Sequence record: LC819007.1
Strand: one strand, 5' to 3'
DNA length: 64,000 nt
This document shows, piece by piece, positions 3,506 to 37,756 of the stretch (its first letter is position 1; every line of letters starts with the position of its first letter). Made by a program: the position numbers and the translations under genes. Under the pieces are notes generated by a model, which had not been told where the DNA came from, made no database searches, and was given only the letters and a program-made list of their open reading frames with translations.

Positions 3506-4915
3506 TTATTCCTTCGAACCACGCGCCGCAGCTTTCGCTTCAGCGATCGAGAAACGAATCCAGCGCGACGCGCCGAAGTGGTTGTAGTACAGGCCGTGTG
3601 CCGAACCGAACGTCGTACCCGCCACCAGATCCGACAACAGACGCATCAGGTTGGAATACTTCGAGAGCAGGCGACGTGCTTCATCAGCATTGTCGCCGCC
3701 ACCGCTGCGATGCGGCTTCGACTTGGTGTCGTCACCGATTTCGAACAGGGCGTTGATTGCCATGTCGATCGCGCGATCAGCCTTGCCAGCCGATTCCTTC
3801 AGCTTCGCGAGGTCTGCAGCCGAAGCACACTTGATGCCGGCGGAGAACTCGGTCTTGCCGTCGTCGAACGTGACTTGCTGGCCTTCCATGCCGCCCGTAC
3901 CGTCGATCGTCAGACGATCCGGCAGGTTCACTTCGACCGTCACCGACGAATGCTGGAACTTCGAGCGACCCATTTCGGCCAACGGCTTCGCAGCGCTGAT
4001 GGCGCTGTTCATGCGGTTGATGACGTCCTTCGGCTCGCTCAGCACCCATGCCTGGCTCATCGCGTGCATTTCGCTCGACACACGATTCACGAGCTTCAGC
4101 ACTTCGTTGAACTCAGCCAACGAGTTGTCCACGACTGCGATCGGGGTCTTGGTCGACGAAGGCGCGTAGAAACGCTCCTGCACCGCCTTTTCCCACTTCG
4201 CGTTTTGGAACGGTTTGCCGGCGACGCTCGCCAGAATGCCCGCTTCCTTTTCCAGCTTCGCGTACACCGACACGGTGCCACGGAAGTAGTCGGCGAAACG
4301 CTTGAGCTTTTCAGCGGTCAGGTCGTACGCCTTCTTCATGAACTTCGCAGCAGCTGCGTAGACCTTTTCAGCGCGGTCACGCAGTTGTTCGACGAAGCTT
4401 TCCGTCGCGATGCGGCGGTCGAAGCCGAACGATTCGAGTGCGACCGATTCCGACAGGGGCTCGCCCACGCCAGCAGCGTCGAGCGCCGTGGTGAGCAGCT
4501 GCACCGTTTCCGGGGTCAGGCCGTCGCCGCTGACAGCGGGCACCGGCTCGCCGGCGTCTTCGCCTTGCGTGACTTCCGTTTCAGCCGGCTCTTGCAGGCT
4601 GGCTTCAGCTTGTTCAGCGATTTCTTCGAGCGACGCTGCGTAACGGCAATAGCGCATCGTCACAGCTTGCAGATGTTCCAGGGCCAGGGTATGTTCCTGG
4701 CTTTCGGCGACCGTGTCGATCTCGTCGTGCTTGGCGATCTCGGCATCTTCGCCGAAGGTCTTGTCGGCCTTGACGTCATCCGTCGACGGCTCTTCGAGGC
4801 TGCCGTCTTCCTTGAAGCCGGGCTTCGGCTGGAACGTCGACAGCTCGGTCACCTGAGCGATATCGACAGTACCGGCTTCGGCTTCCAGTGCTGCGGTGAA
4901 AAGATTTCGTTTCAT
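3506..4915 (-). CDS. Internal head (inner-body-like) protein, paralog family
   Basis: MKRNLFTAALEAE; VALESF and IATESF sites; acidic propeptide followed by a basic mature region. Confidence 0.78.
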   Translation of the reverse strand: MKRNLFTAALEAEAGTVDIAQVTELSTFQPKPGFKEDGSLEEPSTDDVKADKTFGEDAEIAKHDEIDTVAESQEHTLALEHLQAVTMRYCRYAASLEEIAEQAEASLQEPAETEVTQGEDAGEPVPAVSGDGLTPETVQLLTTALDAAGVGEPLSESVALESFGFDRRIATESFVEQLRDRAEKVYAAAAKFMKKAYDLTAEKLKRFADYFRGTVSVYAKLEKEAGILASVAGKPFQNAKWEKAVQERFYAPSSTKTPIAVVDNSLAEFNEVLKLVNRVSSEMHAMSQAWVLSEPKDVINRMNSAISAAKPLAEMGRSKFQHSSVTVEVNLPDRLTIDGTGGMEGQQVTFDDGKTEFSAGIKCASAADLAKLKESAGKADRAIDMAINALFEIGDDTKSKPHRSGGGDNADEARRLLSKYSNLMRLLSDLVAGTTFGSAHGLYYNHFGASRWIRFSIAEAKAAARGSKE

Positions 4916-26408: not shown

Positions 26409-26909
26409 TCACCATGCGTACCTGCGACGACGCTTCGTTTCGACGTATTCTTCCATGGCGACTTCCTGTTTAGGCAGGATGTACCAATGGCCTTTTACGC
26501 CTTCGTAGCTCAAAGGCTTACCTTTCTCGAAACCGAGTTTGGTAAAGAGCTTGATCGATTTCTCGTTGCTCTCTTCAATCCAGACAATGCCAGGACTGTG
26601 CGTTGTGAAGAAGTCTCTTAACGCCCACTGCATAATACCCATGCCACGATACGCTGGGTCCAGATACAGTGCGCCTGAACGCCAGTGCCGCACATCCCTC
26701 ACCATCGTAGTGTACGGCATAAAGAAGCCGGCTATGCGCCCGCTAGCCATATCTACGATGACTTGTTTGATACCTGGTCGACGCAGTTCTTCAGAGTCAA
26801 GAAACGGATCTTCTTCCGCATCGGCGATCGTCTGCATCAACTTCTTCTGCATGGACAGAGGGAGTCTTACATTCTTGATCACTTGATACTGCTTAAACTC
26901 GTTACTCAT
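26409..26909 (-). CDS. GNAT-family N-acetyltransferase
   Basis: Motif A LYLDPAYRGMGIM, and NEKSIKLFTKLGF (N...Y/F..LGF); GGAGG RBS. Confidence 0.85.
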   Translation of the reverse strand: MSNEFKQYQVIKNVRLPLSMQKKLMQTIADAEEDPFLDSEELRRPGIKQVIVDMASGRIAGFFMPYTTMVRDVRHWRSGALYLDPAYRGMGIMQWALRDFFTTHSPGIVWIEESNEKSIKLFTKLGFEKGKPLSYEGVKGHWYILPKQEVAMEEYVETKRRRRYAW

Positions 26910-26965: not shown

Positions 26966-27378
26966 CCCTGTATTGCTAATGGACAGCCCGCGCCCTACAA
27001 ACCTCCCAATATAAGGCGACCCTACGAATGTAAAACCAGGTGGAGGACATCTTAACGTAGTTGGTCGATTACGCTGCTGCTACTACCCAAGGGGCAGGTT
27101 CCTGCAAGTGGATTGAATGCCTTCGTCCTTTTGCGGGATACTGGCATTCGAACCGTTCAAATTGTCAAAGAATGCAACGCGTCATCCCGACGTGGCTGCT
27201 TCCTAAGTGGATTCTACGGAACGTGATTGGACTTCCTGGAGTGATATTGCTCAGTGGCATGCCCTGTCCGCGTCTCGGTCTCTGTGTCTTTGCCTTTGCT
27301 GTATTCCCGCAGTGGGATTTAGTCAGCCATTACGGAACGTTTGAGACCTTACTTCGTTTCCACATAACATACGTTAAG
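26966..27378 (-). ncRNA. Candidate structured non-coding RNA (~410 nt)
   Basis: No minus-strand ORF of 60 aa or more. Nested inverted repeats 27051-27059/27370-27378 and 27131-27141/27301-27311; TATGTTA near the 5' end; terminator at 26931-26965. Confidence 0.4.
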
Positions 27379-27383
27379 CACTG

Positions 27384-27731
27384 TTAATTTTTACCCTGCC
27401 CTTTCTTCATCTCCGCTAAGAGATCGTTGAGCTCCTGGGTTTCTTGAGGTGCGTGCTTTTCCATCACCTCCAGCATCAAGTCGCACATGTAGGGCGGCTG
27501 ATTCAGGAACTCCGTAAAGGACATGTGAAACGCTGTCCCAACCCGAAGGTCACGAAACGCTTCCATGCGCTCGCGCAAGCGAGAGGCGACGATCGTATCC
27601 TCGCACCAGTGATGTCTCACCAAAGCGAAGTGATCGTCGGGTTGTCCACGATGGTCGTAGATACCATGCGCCTGCTCGTACCGCTCCCGCATCAAGATCT
27701 GTACGTCGGTGCTCACGAACCTTTTGGGCAC
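27384..27731 (-). CDS. C-terminal extension (GT-like) reached by -1 frameshift from 27827..29560, or a small standalone protein
   Basis: Frame is open without stops from the slippery site (27869) through GTG 27731. C-terminal FHMSFTEFLNQPPYMCDLMLEVM resembles tail-chaperone GT / T4 gp51-type tails. Confidence 0.65.
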   Translation of the reverse strand: MPKRFVSTDVQILMRERYEQAHGIYDHRGQPDDHFALVRHHWCEDTIVASRLRERMEAFRDLRVGTAFHMSFTEFLNQPPYMCDLMLEVMEKHAPQETQELNDLLAEMKKGQGKN

Positions 27732-27826
27732 GCGAGCAATGTCTCCGGTGTACTCCTCGATCAGGACGCCGTCGCCGAACTTCCAATCCCCAACATGCTT
27801 GGAATGGGCAATTTCGGCTTCGGTGG

Positions 27827-29560
27827 TCAGCGGCGGCTGATGATATCGACGCGCTGCGCGAGTAGGGTAAAAAAAGTGTTCACCACATCGAGCGGAATCA
27901 GGTGCGGGAAGCGGGGCAGACCCATTTCCTTGCCACTGGTTTCCGGGATCGCGACCAAGGCACGAGTTGAGTCGTCCTTGAACTTGTTGATCGCTTCTTC
28001 CAGGATGGCGGTGGCTTCCTCGTCCATCGACAGCACGTTCAGAATCTCCGCGATGTCCTCGCGGCTACTCGTTTCATGCCCTTCGATGAAGATCGACTTG
28101 ATCCACGCACCGTTGTTCCGCAGACGCGACGCCTTGGCGTGCGTAGCGATCATCCGGTTGCGTTCCTGTTCGTTCGGGGCGGCCTGCGTGAACGTCGAGT
28201 CCACGGTCTGCACGATACCGGCGATCCAGTGCTCACCATCAGCGATGTAGTTGTCCACATCGGTTGCAGCCACCAGCACTTCCAGACCCTCACGGATCTT
28301 GACGCGCCGGCCCTGCGCCAGCGACGGAATGAACGTCGACTGGTATTCCTTCACGCGATCGAGCGTCATCGAACCACGTTGGCGGCTAACCATGTGGGAG
28401 CGATGCTTGGCGTCGAAGCTGGCGTTGTCCACCCACATCAGCTTGGCGATGTTGATCTTGGCCGAGATCGTCTGGGTATTCTCGATCCCTTCCTTGGTCA
28501 CCAACGAGCGCACGTAGTCGAAACCACGCGGCCAGATGAGACACGCCATGCCCCAGAACAGGATGTTCAGATCCTGAATCTTGATCAGTGAACGCAACTC
28601 TTGATTGCTGTCCACCCGCACGCTGTGTTCGTAGATGTGCTCGAAACAGAAGTCGAGCAACCAGCTGTTGATGTAGCTCTGCTCGTTGGAGAACACCAAA
28701 CCAAAGGTCTCGCGACCCAGCTCGATCTTCTCTTCCTGCAGACGACGTTGCAACTCGATCAGCGACGACTCGGTCGGCGCCGACAGCGTGATCCAGAAGC
28801 CCGAGTGCCACAGCGGAATCGAGACGATACCACCGAAGCCCATGATCGAGCGCACCCGCAGGATCGCCTTCTCGCCGGTGTAACCACTGGCGCCAGCTTC
28901 TGCGAGCCGCGGCGGCGTAAAGCCGAGCTTGCCCGATTCGGTTTCCAGATACTGCAGGTAATTACTGCCTTCAGCTTTGACGGACGATTCGAAACGTCGA
29001 TCGATGAATACACTGCGCGAAGCAGCGGCCACGATCGATTGGTTCCAATCCGCACCTTTGCCGCTGCGCAAGGCATTCGGCGAGACGAACGCACGAATGC
29101 GCTCGTCGACTTCCTTGCCACGTTCAGCGAGGAAGAACATCACTTCGCTCGTCCCGTTCAGGTCCGTGCGATCGGCCAGAGGCACCGGCTGGCTGGCGTT
29201 GTATTCCATCGTCAGCGTCACGCCCTTGTTCTCCGAGGGCTCGAACGTCAGGCCCTCGTAGTCGGCGTGCACGGCATCGGCCGCACCGATGTTAAAGCCG
29301 CCGCCGGTGGTTTGACCCACCAGCACCGGACGATCCTTCTGGTCCTTCGGCTGCGCTTGCGGAGCTGCAGCGGCCTGCTGTTGGGCAGGCGCAGCTGCTT
29401 GTGCTTGAACAGGCGCTGCCGGAGCAGCAGCCTGCGGTGCAGGTGCCCGGATGGGCGAGGGGACCTTCACCACCGGGTCCTGAGCAACCGGCTGGGCCGG
29501 CAACTCAGCTTGCGGGGTGACGTCGATCCCGGCCTGCACTTGATCGTTATTCTCACTCAT
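27827..29560 (-). CDS. Conserved phiKZ-like protein, possible tail/baseplate-hub assembly chaperone (G-like)
   Basis: 577 aa; P/A/Q-rich N-terminal ~100 aa then a globular region; ends in a T TTT TTT slippery heptamer 14 codons before its stop. Confidence 0.6.
   Translation of the reverse strand: MSENNDQVQAGIDVTPQAELPAQPVAQDPVVKVPSPIRAPAPQAAAPAAPVQAQAAAPAQQQAAAAPQAQPKDQKDRPVLVGQTTGGGFNIGAADAVHADYEGLTFEPSENKGVTLTMEYNASQPVPLADRTDLNGTSEVMFFLAERGKEVDERIRAFVSPNALRSGKGADWNQSIVAAASRSVFIDRRFESSVKAEGSNYLQYLETESGKLGFTPPRLAEAGASGYTGEKAILRVRSIMGFGGIVSIPLWHSGFWITLSAPTESSLIELQRRLQEEKIELGRETFGLVFSNEQSYINSWLLDFCFEHIYEHSVRVDSNQELRSLIKIQDLNILFWGMACLIWPRGFDYVRSLVTKEGIENTQTISAKINIAKLMWVDNASFDAKHRSHMVSRQRGSMTLDRVKEYQSTFIPSLAQGRRVKIREGLEVLVAATDVDNYIADGEHWIAGIVQTVDSTFTQAAPNEQERNRMIATHAKASRLRNNGAWIKSIFIEGHETSSREDIAEILNVLSMDEEATAILEEAINKFKDDSTRALVAIPETSGKEMGLPRFPHLIPLDVVNTFFTLLAQRVDIISRR
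27869..27875 (-). other. Programmed -1 ribosomal frameshift site (T TTT TTT)
   Basis: Minus strand AAC ACT TTT TTT ACC; 7-T run phased as X XXY YYZ; the -1 frame equals the frame of 27384..27731 with no intervening stop. Confidence 0.65.
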
Positions 29561-36850: not shown

Positions 36851-37693
36851 ATGGCGATGACGAAATCGCAGGTCAAACAACTGCAACGTGCGTTGCGTGA
36901 AACGGTGATGCCCAATATCTCCGTGGACGGCGCATGGGGCAAGCAGTGCGACGATGGCCTGGCAGCCTATGCTCAGACCACCGGCACGGATACGGCAGGC
37001 GCTACGGCCCTGCTCACGGCTTATGCGGAGCTGCGTTTCGTCAATGACGACGCGTTCGCTACTGCTGCAGCGGCTCTCAGTGTTCCCGAGAGTTATGTAC
37101 GAGCTATCGCTCAGGTGGAGACCAACGGCGATGGTTTTCTGAAAGACGGGCGCGTCAAGATCCTGTTCGAGCGGCACTGGTTCTACAAGGACCTCACCGC
37201 AGCTCTTGCTACGTCGTCCGATGCGCGCGTCCATGTGGCGGCGAAGCTGGGTATTGCTACGCAGTCCTCTGTCTCCCAGCTGATGGCAGAGATGGTCAAA
37301 CAGCAGAATAACATCTGCGACCCGACCCGTGGCGGCTACAAGGGCAACGAACTGGAGTGGGATCGTCTGAACCTGGCGATGGACTACGACGTCGAAGCGG
37401 CCGCTCAGTCGGCTAGTTATGGCGGCTTCCAGTTGATGGGCTTCAACTTCAAGCAGTGCGGTTACCCCAACGCGCGCACGATGATGATTGATCTCGCGGG
37501 TTCGGAGTCCAAGCAGTTCCTGGCTGTGGTGGCGTTCATTAAGGCCAACCCCAACCTGCTCTCGGCGGTTCGAGCAGCAGACTGGGCGAAGTTCGCTATG
37601 GGCTACAACGGTTCCTCGTACAAGGAAAACAAGTACGACACCAAGCTGGCTGATGCGGTCACTGCTTTCAACAAGCAAACTGCACTGGCTTAA
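36851..37693 (+). CDS. N-acetylmuramidase (DUF3380-type) endolysin-like protein with N-terminal PG-binding-like segment
   Basis: IAQVETNGDGF...ILFERHWF, SASYGGFQLMGFN and WAKFAMGYNG; N-terminal LQRAL...VDGAWG; AGGAG RBS. Confidence 0.88.
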   Translation: MAMTKSQVKQLQRALRETVMPNISVDGAWGKQCDDGLAAYAQTTGTDTAGATALLTAYAELRFVNDDAFATAAAALSVPESYVRAIAQVETNGDGFLKDGRVKILFERHWFYKDLTAALATSSDARVHVAAKLGIATQSSVSQLMAEMVKQQNNICDPTRGGYKGNELEWDRLNLAMDYDVEAAAQSASYGGFQLMGFNFKQCGYPNARTMMIDLAGSESKQFLAVVAFIKANPNLLSAVRAADWAKFAMGYNGSSYKENKYDTKLADAVTAFNKQTALA

Positions 37694-37711
37694 GCAAAAA
37701 AAAAATAGCGA

Positions 37712-37756
37712 CATAAGCAGAGAGAAACGACCTCACGGTCGTTTCTCTCTTTATGC
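37712..37756. terminator. Bidirectional terminator flanked by CATAA/TTATGC
   Basis: AGAGAGAAACGACC/GGTCGTTTCTCTCT stem between convergent genes. Confidence 0.85.

What the first reader, a model, noticed from the sequence alone, without database searches (positions are those of the whole stretch)
27384..27880. Programmed -1 frameshift (T TTT TTT) fusing a 577-aa gene to the downstream ORF, a G/GT-like pair in a jumbo phage
Seen: near the end of 27827..29560 the minus strand reads AAC ACT TTT TTT ACC, with a 7-T run (27869-27875) phased as X XXY YYZ. The -1 frame is exactly the frame of 27384..27731. It stays open for 46 codons (YPTRAARRYHQPPLTTEAEIAHSKHVGDWKFGDGVLIEEYTGDIAR) before the track GTG, with no ATG in that stretch. 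Known: lambda G/GT and P2 E/E-prime tail-assembly chaperones use this architecture, and P2 slips on a U-run. Inference: two products are made, 577 aa and about 725 aa, possibly a tail or baseplate-hub chaperone pair. I am not aware of this being described for Chimalliviridae. Caveat: the operon has an early-like promoter and the first protein is far larger than typical chaperones, so the function may differ.
Basis: partly seen in the sequence, partly recalled or inferred. Interest (0 to 1): 0.8.

Follow-up and report, generated by a model that had tools for sequence, protein, structure and literature searches.

The report
Conserved frameshift site in jumbo phages
Near the end of a 577-residue gene of this Ralstonia jumbo phage, a run of T's that is kept in relatives as distant as phiKZ leads into a downstream reading frame with no conserved start codon, so ribosomes very probably slip back one base there and make a second, longer protein that no genome annotation lists.

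Summary
The window is Ralstonia phage FLC4-3B. Its gene gp276 is the phiKZ gp77 family. It reads AAC ACT TTT TTT ACC 13 codons before its stop. The -1 frame stays open for 161 codons, through annotated gp275, with no ATG, GTG or TTG for the first 46.

Comparison makes this far more than chance. I examined 43 non-redundant loci in 24 clusters at 50% identity. Hosts range from Ralstonia, Burkholderia, Pseudomonas (phiKZ, 201phi2-1, PhiPA3) and Erwinia to Vibrio and Bacillus.
- The small ORF is always in the -1 frame and open from the T-run (151-178 codons).
- 31 of 43 loci carry T_TTT_TTN; the rest carry near-heptamers.
- The two Phe codons are almost always TTT, even where TTC dominates the gene.
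- The first canonical start lies anywhere from +8 to +87 codons.
- The start-less bridge is under purifying selection in the -1 frame only.
- No in-frame fusion was found.

Best reading: a conserved programmed -1 frameshift gives a roughly 725-residue product beside the 577-residue one. It works like G/GT but is not a tail-chaperone pair. Function is unknown, with only a weak fold likeness to T4-like baseplate-hub assembly proteins. No description was found in the searchable literature. No product has been observed directly.

The parts
27827..29560 (-). Upstream gene (FLC4-3B gp276). Its 0-frame product is 577 residues. It is the ortholog of phiKZ gp77, 201phi2-1 gp136 and PhiPA3 gp074, and belongs to phrog_4585. 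Residues 1-98 are predicted disordered (Ala/Pro/Gln-rich); the rest is a confident mixed alpha/beta fold.
27869..27875 (-). Candidate recoding signal: the heptamer U_UUU_UUU in X_XXY_YYZ phase (ACT TTT TTT). It encodes the invariant Phe563-Phe564 at the start of the last helix of the 0-frame protein. I treat it as a signal in an intact gene, not as damage.
27827..27868 (-). Dual-coding overlap. In the 0 frame it holds the last 13 codons and the stop of gp276. In the -1 frame it holds the first 14 codons after the run. Its nucleotides are nearly invariant in the close clade: 0.89 mean pairwise identity against 0.72 for the upstream 60 nt.
27384..27869 (-). The -1 frame ORF: 161 sense codons plus stop, counted from the last T of the run. 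It matches phrog_12109 over residues 17-160 and corresponds to 201phi2-1 gp135 and PHIKZ076.4. The predicted structure is all-helical but of low confidence.
27732..27826 (-). The 'bridge': the part of the -1 ORF after the 0-frame stop and before the first canonical start codon. It is unannotated in the record. It is coding, because purifying selection is seen in the -1 frame only, and it contains the conserved HVGDWKFG motif.
27384..27731 (-). gp275 as annotated (GTG start, 115 residues). This is most likely a truncated description of the -1 ORF.
27846..27861 (-). Tentative: a small local hairpin (6 pairs, one bulge) that starts 7 nt after the run. It is not better than shuffled sequence and is not conserved across the family, so it is not claimed as a stimulator.

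Best explanation
This is a programmed -1 ribosomal frameshift. Ribosomes translating gp276 reach ACU UUU UUU with the two Phe tRNAs in the P and A sites. A fraction of them slip back one base and continue in the -1 frame. Those ribosomes skip the last 13 codons of gp276. They read the 161-codon downstream ORF instead. The result is a product of about 725 residues, in which the terminal helix of gp276 is replaced by a Pro-rich linker and a helical domain of about 145 residues. Ribosomes that do not slip make the 577-residue protein. The arrangement is ancestral to the phiKZ gp77 gene family of nucleus-forming and related jumbo phages. What is shown: the site, the frame relation, its conservation, the lack of a conserved start and the coding constraint on the bridge. 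What is inferred: that slippage occurs, that it happens on the ribosome, its efficiency (probably low, since no stimulator was found), and any role of the long form. My guess for that role is a substoichiometric adaptor version of a non-virion, possibly assembly-related, protein.
For: (1) In 43 non-redundant loci (24 clusters at 50% aa identity, 13 at 40%), the small ORF lies in the -1 frame and is open from the T-run to its stop, for 151-178 codons. Upstream of the run the same frame is closed within 4-6 codons in about sixteen of these loci. (2) Site counts: T_TTT_TTT 26, T_TTT_TTC 3, T_TTT_TTG 1 and T_TTT_TTA 1, so 31 of 43 are canonical X_XXY_YYZ. The rest are G_TTT_TTT 6, A_TTT_TTT 4, A_TTT_TTC 1 and A_CTT_TTT 1. 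The run is kept even where Phe-Phe became Phe-Leu. (3) Codon choice runs against usage. Outside the site TTT is 3/22 in FLC4-3B, and 0 of 14-24 in five other loci, yet the site is TTT TTT. (4) There is no conserved start. The first ATG/GTG/TTG in the -1 frame falls between +8 and +87 codons (phiKZ +85, AH06 +85, AgentSmith +87). Gene callers give 57-169 residues with starts spread over profile positions 2-81. (5) The start-less bridge is coding. pN/pS is 0.21 (FLC4-3B against L008) and 0.38 (against RP12) in the -1 frame, compared with 0.57-1.55 in the other frames. Given each gene's own -1 stop density, the chance that the bridge is open is 5e-8 in phiKZ and 1e-7 in AgentSmith. (6) No in-frame fusion was found. 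The 57 homologs of the large protein are 488-581 residues long. The best 150 of 742 clusters matching the small domain are all 169 residues or shorter. (7) It is not a sequencing error: the same run occurs in FLC4-3B, FLC1-1B, RP12, RP31 and several metagenome contigs.
Against: No protein, ribosome-profiling or transcript data for the long product were available. No stimulatory element was found. The downstream fold has z = 0.06, RNAalifold gives 0 conserved pairs, and there is no consistent SD-like motif upstream. Twelve of 43 loci lack a perfect heptamer, and two have only five T's (PS119XW, pVa-21). Some phages do have a start codon next to the 0-frame stop (RP12 and L045 ATG, 201phi2-1 TTG), so independent initiation is possible there. 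Phe-Phe is itself a conserved dipeptide, which explains the phase of the run though not the codon choice. Conservation of the overlap cannot be assigned to one frame.
Confidence: 0.6

Rival explanations
1. Programmed transcriptional slippage. The RNA polymerase (host or one of the phage's own multisubunit enzymes) stutters on the T-run. It makes a subpopulation of transcripts whose run length differs from the template, so that standard translation yields the same long protein.
For: The conserved element is a homopolymer of 6-8 T in 41 of 43 loci, and rU:dA hybrids are the most slippage-prone (established knowledge). No ribosomal stimulator was found. One deposited relative carries a single frame interruption in this gene, which shows at least that the run is unstable in copying or in sequencing.
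Against: From general knowledge, runs of 5-6 are too short for appreciable slippage during elongation by known bacterial polymerases, yet 13 of 43 loci have at most 6. The run is always phased as N_UUU_UUN in the 0 frame. It is extended almost only on the 5' side, where it completes the ribosomal heptamer, rather than lengthened to 9 or more.
Confidence: 0.15
2. No recoding. There are two separate proteins, and the small ORF is translated on its own. This would happen through termination-reinitiation or a non-canonical start (for example the CTG that overlaps the TGA in FLC4-3B) near the end of the large gene. The T-run would then be kept for another reason.
For: RP12 and L045 have an ATG, and 201phi2-1 a TTG, overlapping the upstream stop. 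The phrog_12109 profile begins about there. The 0-frame tail is conserved and modelled as a well-packed helix, so the short product is real.
Against: The start is not conserved even among close relatives. L008 has CTA where FLC4-3B has CTG. L042-L044 have their first canonical starts at +43, +37 and +30, after the conserved HVGDWKFG motif. phiKZ, AH06 and AgentSmith have none for 85-87 codons. This reading does not explain TTT TTT against codon bias in 24 lineages. It also does not explain why the -1 frame always opens just before the run.
Confidence: 0.17
3. Artefact or decay: either a homopolymer sequencing error has split one gene, or a once-fused gene is now a pseudogene.
For: Homopolymers are error-prone in sequencing. 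One relative (Xanthomonas phage RTH11) does show one frameshift in this gene as deposited.
Against: The same arrangement occurs in independently sequenced isolates and metagenomes of 24 lineages. Both the 0-frame tail and the -1 ORF are under constraint. No fused form was found.
Confidence: 0.02

Closest known systems
Tail assembly chaperone pairs made by -1 frameshifting (lambda G/GT, P2 E/E'); from my own knowledge, not tested with a comparator
   Same: The shift lies near the 3' end of the upstream ORF. The two ORFs overlap by a short stretch in the -1 phase. The outcome is a short product plus a C-terminally extended one. As I recall, P2 also slips on a T-run.
   Different: The upstream protein is 577 residues rather than about 100-150. 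The genes lie beside a virion RNA polymerase beta' fragment gene and small hypothetical genes, not between tail tube and tape measure genes. There is no sequence or fold match to chaperone families. The phiKZ ortholog was chosen as an early-expressed protein in PMC11849849.
IS3- and IS1-family transposases (orfA-orfB fusion by -1 frameshift); own knowledge, reviewed in PMC5009743, which one search listed but which I did not read
   Same: The downstream ORF has no dependable start codon of its own and is reached only through the shift. It uses a homopolymeric X_XXY_YYZ heptamer. Both the short and the fused products are used.
   Different: Those elements use A_AAA_AAG with a downstream structure or an upstream SD-like stimulator. 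Here the heptamer is U_UUU_UUN and no stimulator was found. The proteins are unrelated.
E. coli dnaX tau/gamma (summarised in PMC7412058)
   Same: One gene gives two products in a set ratio through a -1 shift on a homopolymeric heptamer.
   Different: In dnaX the shifted product is the shorter one. Here the shifted product is about 150 residues longer.
Proteins named 'Baseplate hub assembly protein, bacteriophage T4-like' or 'Baseplate hub subunit' in BFVD
   Same: Several independent Foldseek matches of the gp276 model (E = 6e-4, 0.011 and 0.035; TM 0.41-0.49 normalised by target). Two deposited orthologs carry such names. phiKZ gp77 is not named among the virion proteins of the phiKZ atlas, as would be expected for an assembly factor.
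   Different: The matches cover only about 320 of 577 residues at 8-14% identity. There is no Pfam hit. The gene is not in a baseplate module. I could not check with a tool which T4 gene product the family name stands for. From memory, T4 gene 26 also gives two products, but by internal initiation rather than frameshifting.

Membership tests
Programmed -1 ribosomal frameshift cassette | Slippery heptamer X_XXY_YYZ in the 0-frame phase | tested here: met
   U_UUU_UUU in the window. A canonical heptamer occurs in 31 of 43 loci and near-heptamers in the rest.
Programmed -1 ribosomal frameshift cassette | Downstream ORF in the -1 frame, overlapping the upstream ORF, open from the site, and without a start of its own | tested here: met
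   161 open codons with the first canonical start at +46. The same holds in all 43 loci, with starts at +8 to +87.
Programmed -1 ribosomal frameshift cassette | Site and frame relation conserved in relatives beyond what coding needs explain | tested here: met
   TTT TTT is used against TTC-biased codon usage. 24 lineages share the arrangement. Bridge pN/pS is 0.21-0.38 in the -1 frame only.
Programmed -1 ribosomal frameshift cassette | Stimulatory element (downstream hairpin or pseudoknot, or upstream SD-like sequence) | tested here: not met
   Folding z-scores of 0.06 and 0.28. RNAalifold gives 0 pairs over 19 sequences. Only a weak, lineage-specific hairpin is present.
Programmed -1 ribosomal frameshift cassette | Trans-frame protein product observed | not testable with these tools
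   Only protein-level detection of PHIKZ077 in infected cells was found. No data exist on the -1 ORF.
Tail assembly chaperone pair (G/GT type) | Located between tail tube and tape measure genes | tested here: not met
   The neighbours are a putative RNA polymerase beta' subunit, hypothetical genes and a GNAT-like ORF. In phiKZ and 201phi2-1 a DNA helicase gene is nearby.
Tail assembly chaperone pair (G/GT type) | Small upstream protein (about 100-150 residues) of a chaperone family | tested here: not met
   The upstream protein is 577 residues. There are no Pfam or PDB matches. The only chaperone-named Foldseek hit has E = 0.9.
T4-like baseplate hub assembly protein family | Sequence or fold homology to the family | tested here: inconclusive
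   Foldseek against BFVD gives E = 6e-4 to 0.035 with TM by target 0.41-0.49. There is no Pfam hit and no PDB hit.
phiKZ gp77 family (phrog_4585) | Full-length profile match and conserved synteny | tested here: met
   phrog_4585 matches at E = 4.5e-130 over residues 50-575. tblastn hits 173 phage records, including PHIKZ077. The 201phi2-1 record notes the equivalence.
phrog_12109 (small ORF family) | Profile match | tested here: met
   E = 1.9e-48, with residues 17-160 of the -1 ORF matching profile positions 3-146 of 147.

The most novel reading that the evidence does not exclude
The shift has no RNA stimulator and is kept in phages of both Gram-negative and Gram-positive hosts. Its efficiency may therefore be set by the phage itself. 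One route would be slippage-prone transcription by one of the two phage-encoded multisubunit RNA polymerases. Another would be a phage factor acting on ribosomes. Either way, the ratio of short to long gp77-family protein would change during infection and act as a timing switch.
Probability: 0.1. Interest if true: 0.85.

Novelty: new member of a known kind. Interest (0 to 1): 0.65.

Why it matters
If it is real, every phiKZ-like genome (173 phage records hit here, and 742 protein clusters for the small domain) lacks one protein of about 700 residues in its annotation. Those genomes also carry a wrongly bounded, or entirely missing, small gene. PHIKZ076.4 is annotated at 80 residues, and phage 9Ps-7B has no gene called there at all. 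It would be a recoding event in a widely conserved gene of the nucleus-forming phages, a group under intense study. It would give a handle on the unknown function of gp77. It would also offer a natural, stimulator-poor U-run frameshift site to study in Pseudomonas and Ralstonia. Neither a 2026 review of jumbo phage biology nor the other papers searched mention it.

Tried and rejected
- Two family scans failed because of an off-by-one frame reference. I repeated them correctly (then 15, 16).
- Function of the large protein: Pfam gave nothing. A PDB search by profile gave nothing. Foldseek against PDB gave nothing below E = 1e-3. Only BFVD gave weak matches to proteins named as baseplate-hub components.
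- Function of the small domain: nothing in Pfam or PDB. The AlphaFold model has pLDDT 59.6, too poor for a fold search.
- RNA stimulator: none found.
- Intrinsic terminator at the run: none on that strand.
- In-frame fused relatives: none. The 686-residue BFVD matches are simply longer large proteins of the SPN3US-like group. Two members of that group, Kwan and CR5, still have the run and a separate -1 ORF.
- Literature on a gp77 frameshift: nothing found. Other 'gp77' mentions refer to different phages' numbering.
- Essentiality in the PCH45 transposon study could not be located.
- fetched the wrong part of the record through my own coordinate error and was not used.
- The A10 run elsewhere in the window is intergenic.
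Full report
**What is there.** The window matches Ralstonia phage FLC4-3B (291 kb) at 100% identity. FLC1-1B matches at 99%, and RP12 and RP31 at 77%. On the minus strand, ORF 27827..29560 is annotated gp276 (577 residues), and ORF 27384..27731 is annotated gp275 (115 residues, GTG start). Thirteen codons before its TGA stop, gp276 reads AAC ACT TTT TTT ACC. From the last T of that run, the -1 frame is open for 161 codons to the stop of gp275. It holds no ATG, GTG or TTG in the first 46 codons.

**Identity of the two ORFs.**
- gp276 matches phrog_4585 at E = 4.5e-130.
- The -1 ORF matches phrog_12109, a 147-position profile aligned to its residues 17-160. This is well upstream of the annotated GTG.
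- tblastn finds the large protein in 173 phage records: Pseudomonas 69, Erwinia 35, Serratia 19, Ralstonia 13, Vibrio 10 and others.
- The 201phi2-1 record names the ortholog gp136 and notes its similarity to phiKZ gp77 and EL gp47. The ORF after it is gp135.
- In phiKZ the pair is PHIKZ077 and PHIKZ076.4. The latter is annotated at only 80 residues, with a 218-nt unannotated gap before it.
- In the phiKZ-type phage 9Ps-7B, nothing is annotated there at all.

**Comparative test.** I collected loci from annotated phage records, IMG/VR contigs and metagenome contigs. After removing duplicates, 43 loci remain. They form 24 clusters at 50% identity of the large protein, or 13 clusters at 40%.
- In all 43 loci the small ORF lies in the -1 frame of the large gene.
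- In all 43 that frame is uninterrupted from the T-run to the small ORF's stop, a span of 151-178 codons.
- The 0-frame tail after the run is 8-44 codons long.
- Upstream of the run the -1 frame closes quickly, within 4-6 codons in about sixteen of the 43 loci. The open frame therefore begins at the run.
- Using each gene's own density of -1 frame stops as background, the chance that the stretch from the run to the first canonical start stays open is 5e-8 in phiKZ, 1e-7 in Bacillus phage AgentSmith, and 5e-4 to 2e-3 in AH06, Proteus phage 10 and pEa_SNUABM_54.

**The site itself.**
- The heptamer in 0-frame phase is T_TTT_TTT in 26 loci, T_TTT_TTC in 3, T_TTT_TTG in 1 and T_TTT_TTA in 1. That makes 31 canonical X_XXY_YYZ sites.
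- The other twelve are G_TTT_TTT (6), A_TTT_TTT (4), A_TTT_TTC (1) and A_CTT_TTT (1).
- Twenty of the 24 clusters have a canonical heptamer in at least one member.
- The two Phe residues are invariant in the protein alignments, which explains the phase of the run.
- It does not explain the codons. Outside the site, TTT makes up 3 of 22 Phe codons in FLC4-3B and 0 of 14-24 in five other loci. It is at most 15% in most GC-rich lineages. Yet the site is TTT TTT in 36 of the 43 loci (26 + 6 + 4 in the heptamer counts above).
- In FLC4-3B the preceding Thr uses ACT, which is 2 of 30 Thr codons in the gene.
- Where the dipeptide changed to Phe-Leu, the run was still kept.
- In a nucleotide alignment of 19 lineages, the T's are the only invariant block.

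**No conserved start, yet coding.**
- The first canonical start in the -1 frame after the run lies anywhere from +8 to +87 codons: RP12 +14, FLC4-3B +46, phiKZ +85, AH06 +85, AgentSmith +87.
- Among close relatives of FLC4-3B, the first starts are at +43, +37, +30 and +14. The conserved motif HVGDWKFG lies upstream of the first three.
- Gene callers accordingly return products of 100-149 residues for close relatives and 57-169 residues across the family. Their first residues fall anywhere between profile positions 2 and 81.
- The bridge between the 0-frame stop and the first start is under purifying selection in the -1 frame only. pN/pS is 0.21 against L008 and 0.38 against RP12, compared with 0.57-1.55 in the other two frames.
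- The -1 frame peptides align from the run onwards across the family, including through regions that the records leave as intergenic.

**Fusions and errors.** None of the 57 homologs of the large protein exceeds 581 residues. None of the best 150 of 742 clusters matching the small domain exceeds 169 residues. The two parts were therefore never found joined in one frame. The same run occurs in independently sequenced isolates and metagenomes, so a sequencing error is excluded. One deposited relative, Xanthomonas phage RTH11, has one frameshift in the large gene. I count it and give no further detail.

**Mechanism.**
- The pattern is what a programmed -1 frameshift predicts.
- I favour the ribosomal mechanism for three reasons. 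The conserved core is always N_UUU_UUN in phase. The extra T's lie almost always on the 5' side, where they complete the heptamer. Thirteen loci have only 5-6 T's, which from general knowledge is too short for appreciable polymerase slippage.
- Transcriptional slippage remains possible, especially because these phages use their own RNA polymerases.
- No stimulator was found. Folding downstream and upstream is no better than shuffled sequence (z = 0.06 and 0.28). There is no conserved structure.
- There is no terminator at the run.
- A small hairpin 7 nt after the run is nearly invariant in the close clade, but it lies in the dual-coding overlap.
- With no stimulator, I expect the long form to be a minor product. 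This is inference.

**Function.**
- The AlphaFold model of gp276 is good (pLDDT 77, pTM 0.76). The N-terminal 98 residues are disordered. The Phe-Phe pair sits at the start of the last helix, residues 559-576. The long form would therefore lose that helix and gain a Pro-rich linker and a helical domain.
- The model has no match in PDB.
- Against BFVD it finds its orthologs. More weakly, it finds several proteins named T4-like baseplate hub assembly protein or hub subunit (E = 6e-4 to 0.035).
- Two deposited orthologs carry such names.
- phiKZ gp77 is not mentioned in the 40-protein structural atlas of the phiKZ virion. It was detected in infected cells. It appears in a set of early-expressed proteins (PMC11849849).
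- The small domain has no match anywhere, and its model is poor.
- Function is therefore unknown. A non-virion, possibly assembly-related, role is the best guess.

**Comparison and novelty.** It works like the lambda G/GT and P2 E/E' pairs and like IS3-type orfA-orfB fusions. It fails the defining tests of the tail chaperone family on gene position, size and homology. I found no paper that describes it. A 2026 review of jumbo phage biology contains none of the words frameshift, slippage or recoding. I rate it a new member of a known kind: a classical type of recoding in a new, widely conserved gene family.

Noticed in passing
window 37696-37705: An A10 run, the longest homopolymer in the window. 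It lies directly after the stop of the + strand ORF 36851..37693 and just before an inverted repeat (about 37720-37750) that looks like a terminator between convergent genes. It is intergenic and not a recoding candidate.
   Followed up: partly
window 27352-27371 (minus strand); L003 about 4871-4890: A 20-nt motif (TATGTTATGTGGAAACGAAG) just downstream of the small ORF's stop. It is identical in RP12 although the flanks differ, and it is unique in the window. It may be a transcription signal; its role is unexplained.
   Followed up: partly
L006 (Xanthomonas phage RTH11): The large gene of this deposited genome carries one frameshift, unlike the 43 non-redundant loci examined. Its annotated product therefore ends in an unrelated tail. 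This is either a homopolymer miscount or a real variant.
   Followed up: partly
L041 (phiKZ), L040 (9Ps-7B), L046-L050: Public annotations leave 100-220 nt 'gaps' after the large gene and call the small gene at very different lengths. PHIKZ076.4 is 80 residues, and 9Ps-7B has no call at all. The gaps are conserved coding sequence in the -1 frame.
   Followed up: yes
window 29270-29560 (minus strand; residues 1-98 of gp276): The N-terminus is an Ala/Pro/Gln-rich, predicted disordered stretch. It differs in length among close relatives (RP12's protein is 29 residues shorter), and tblastn does not align its first 74 residues to RP12 or RP31.
   Followed up: no
window 26409-26909 (minus strand); L003 5396-5758: The gene after the pair is a GNAT-type acetyltransferase ORF in FLC4-3B (Pfam E = 1e-6). 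RP12 has an SNase-domain nuclease at that place. This is a variable spot next to a conserved block.
   Followed up: no
L049 (Bacillus phage vB_BspM_AgentSmith): A 200-kb phage of a Gram-positive host has the same gene pair, the same -1 relation and a T_TTT_TTA site. There is no canonical start for 87 codons.
   Followed up: partly
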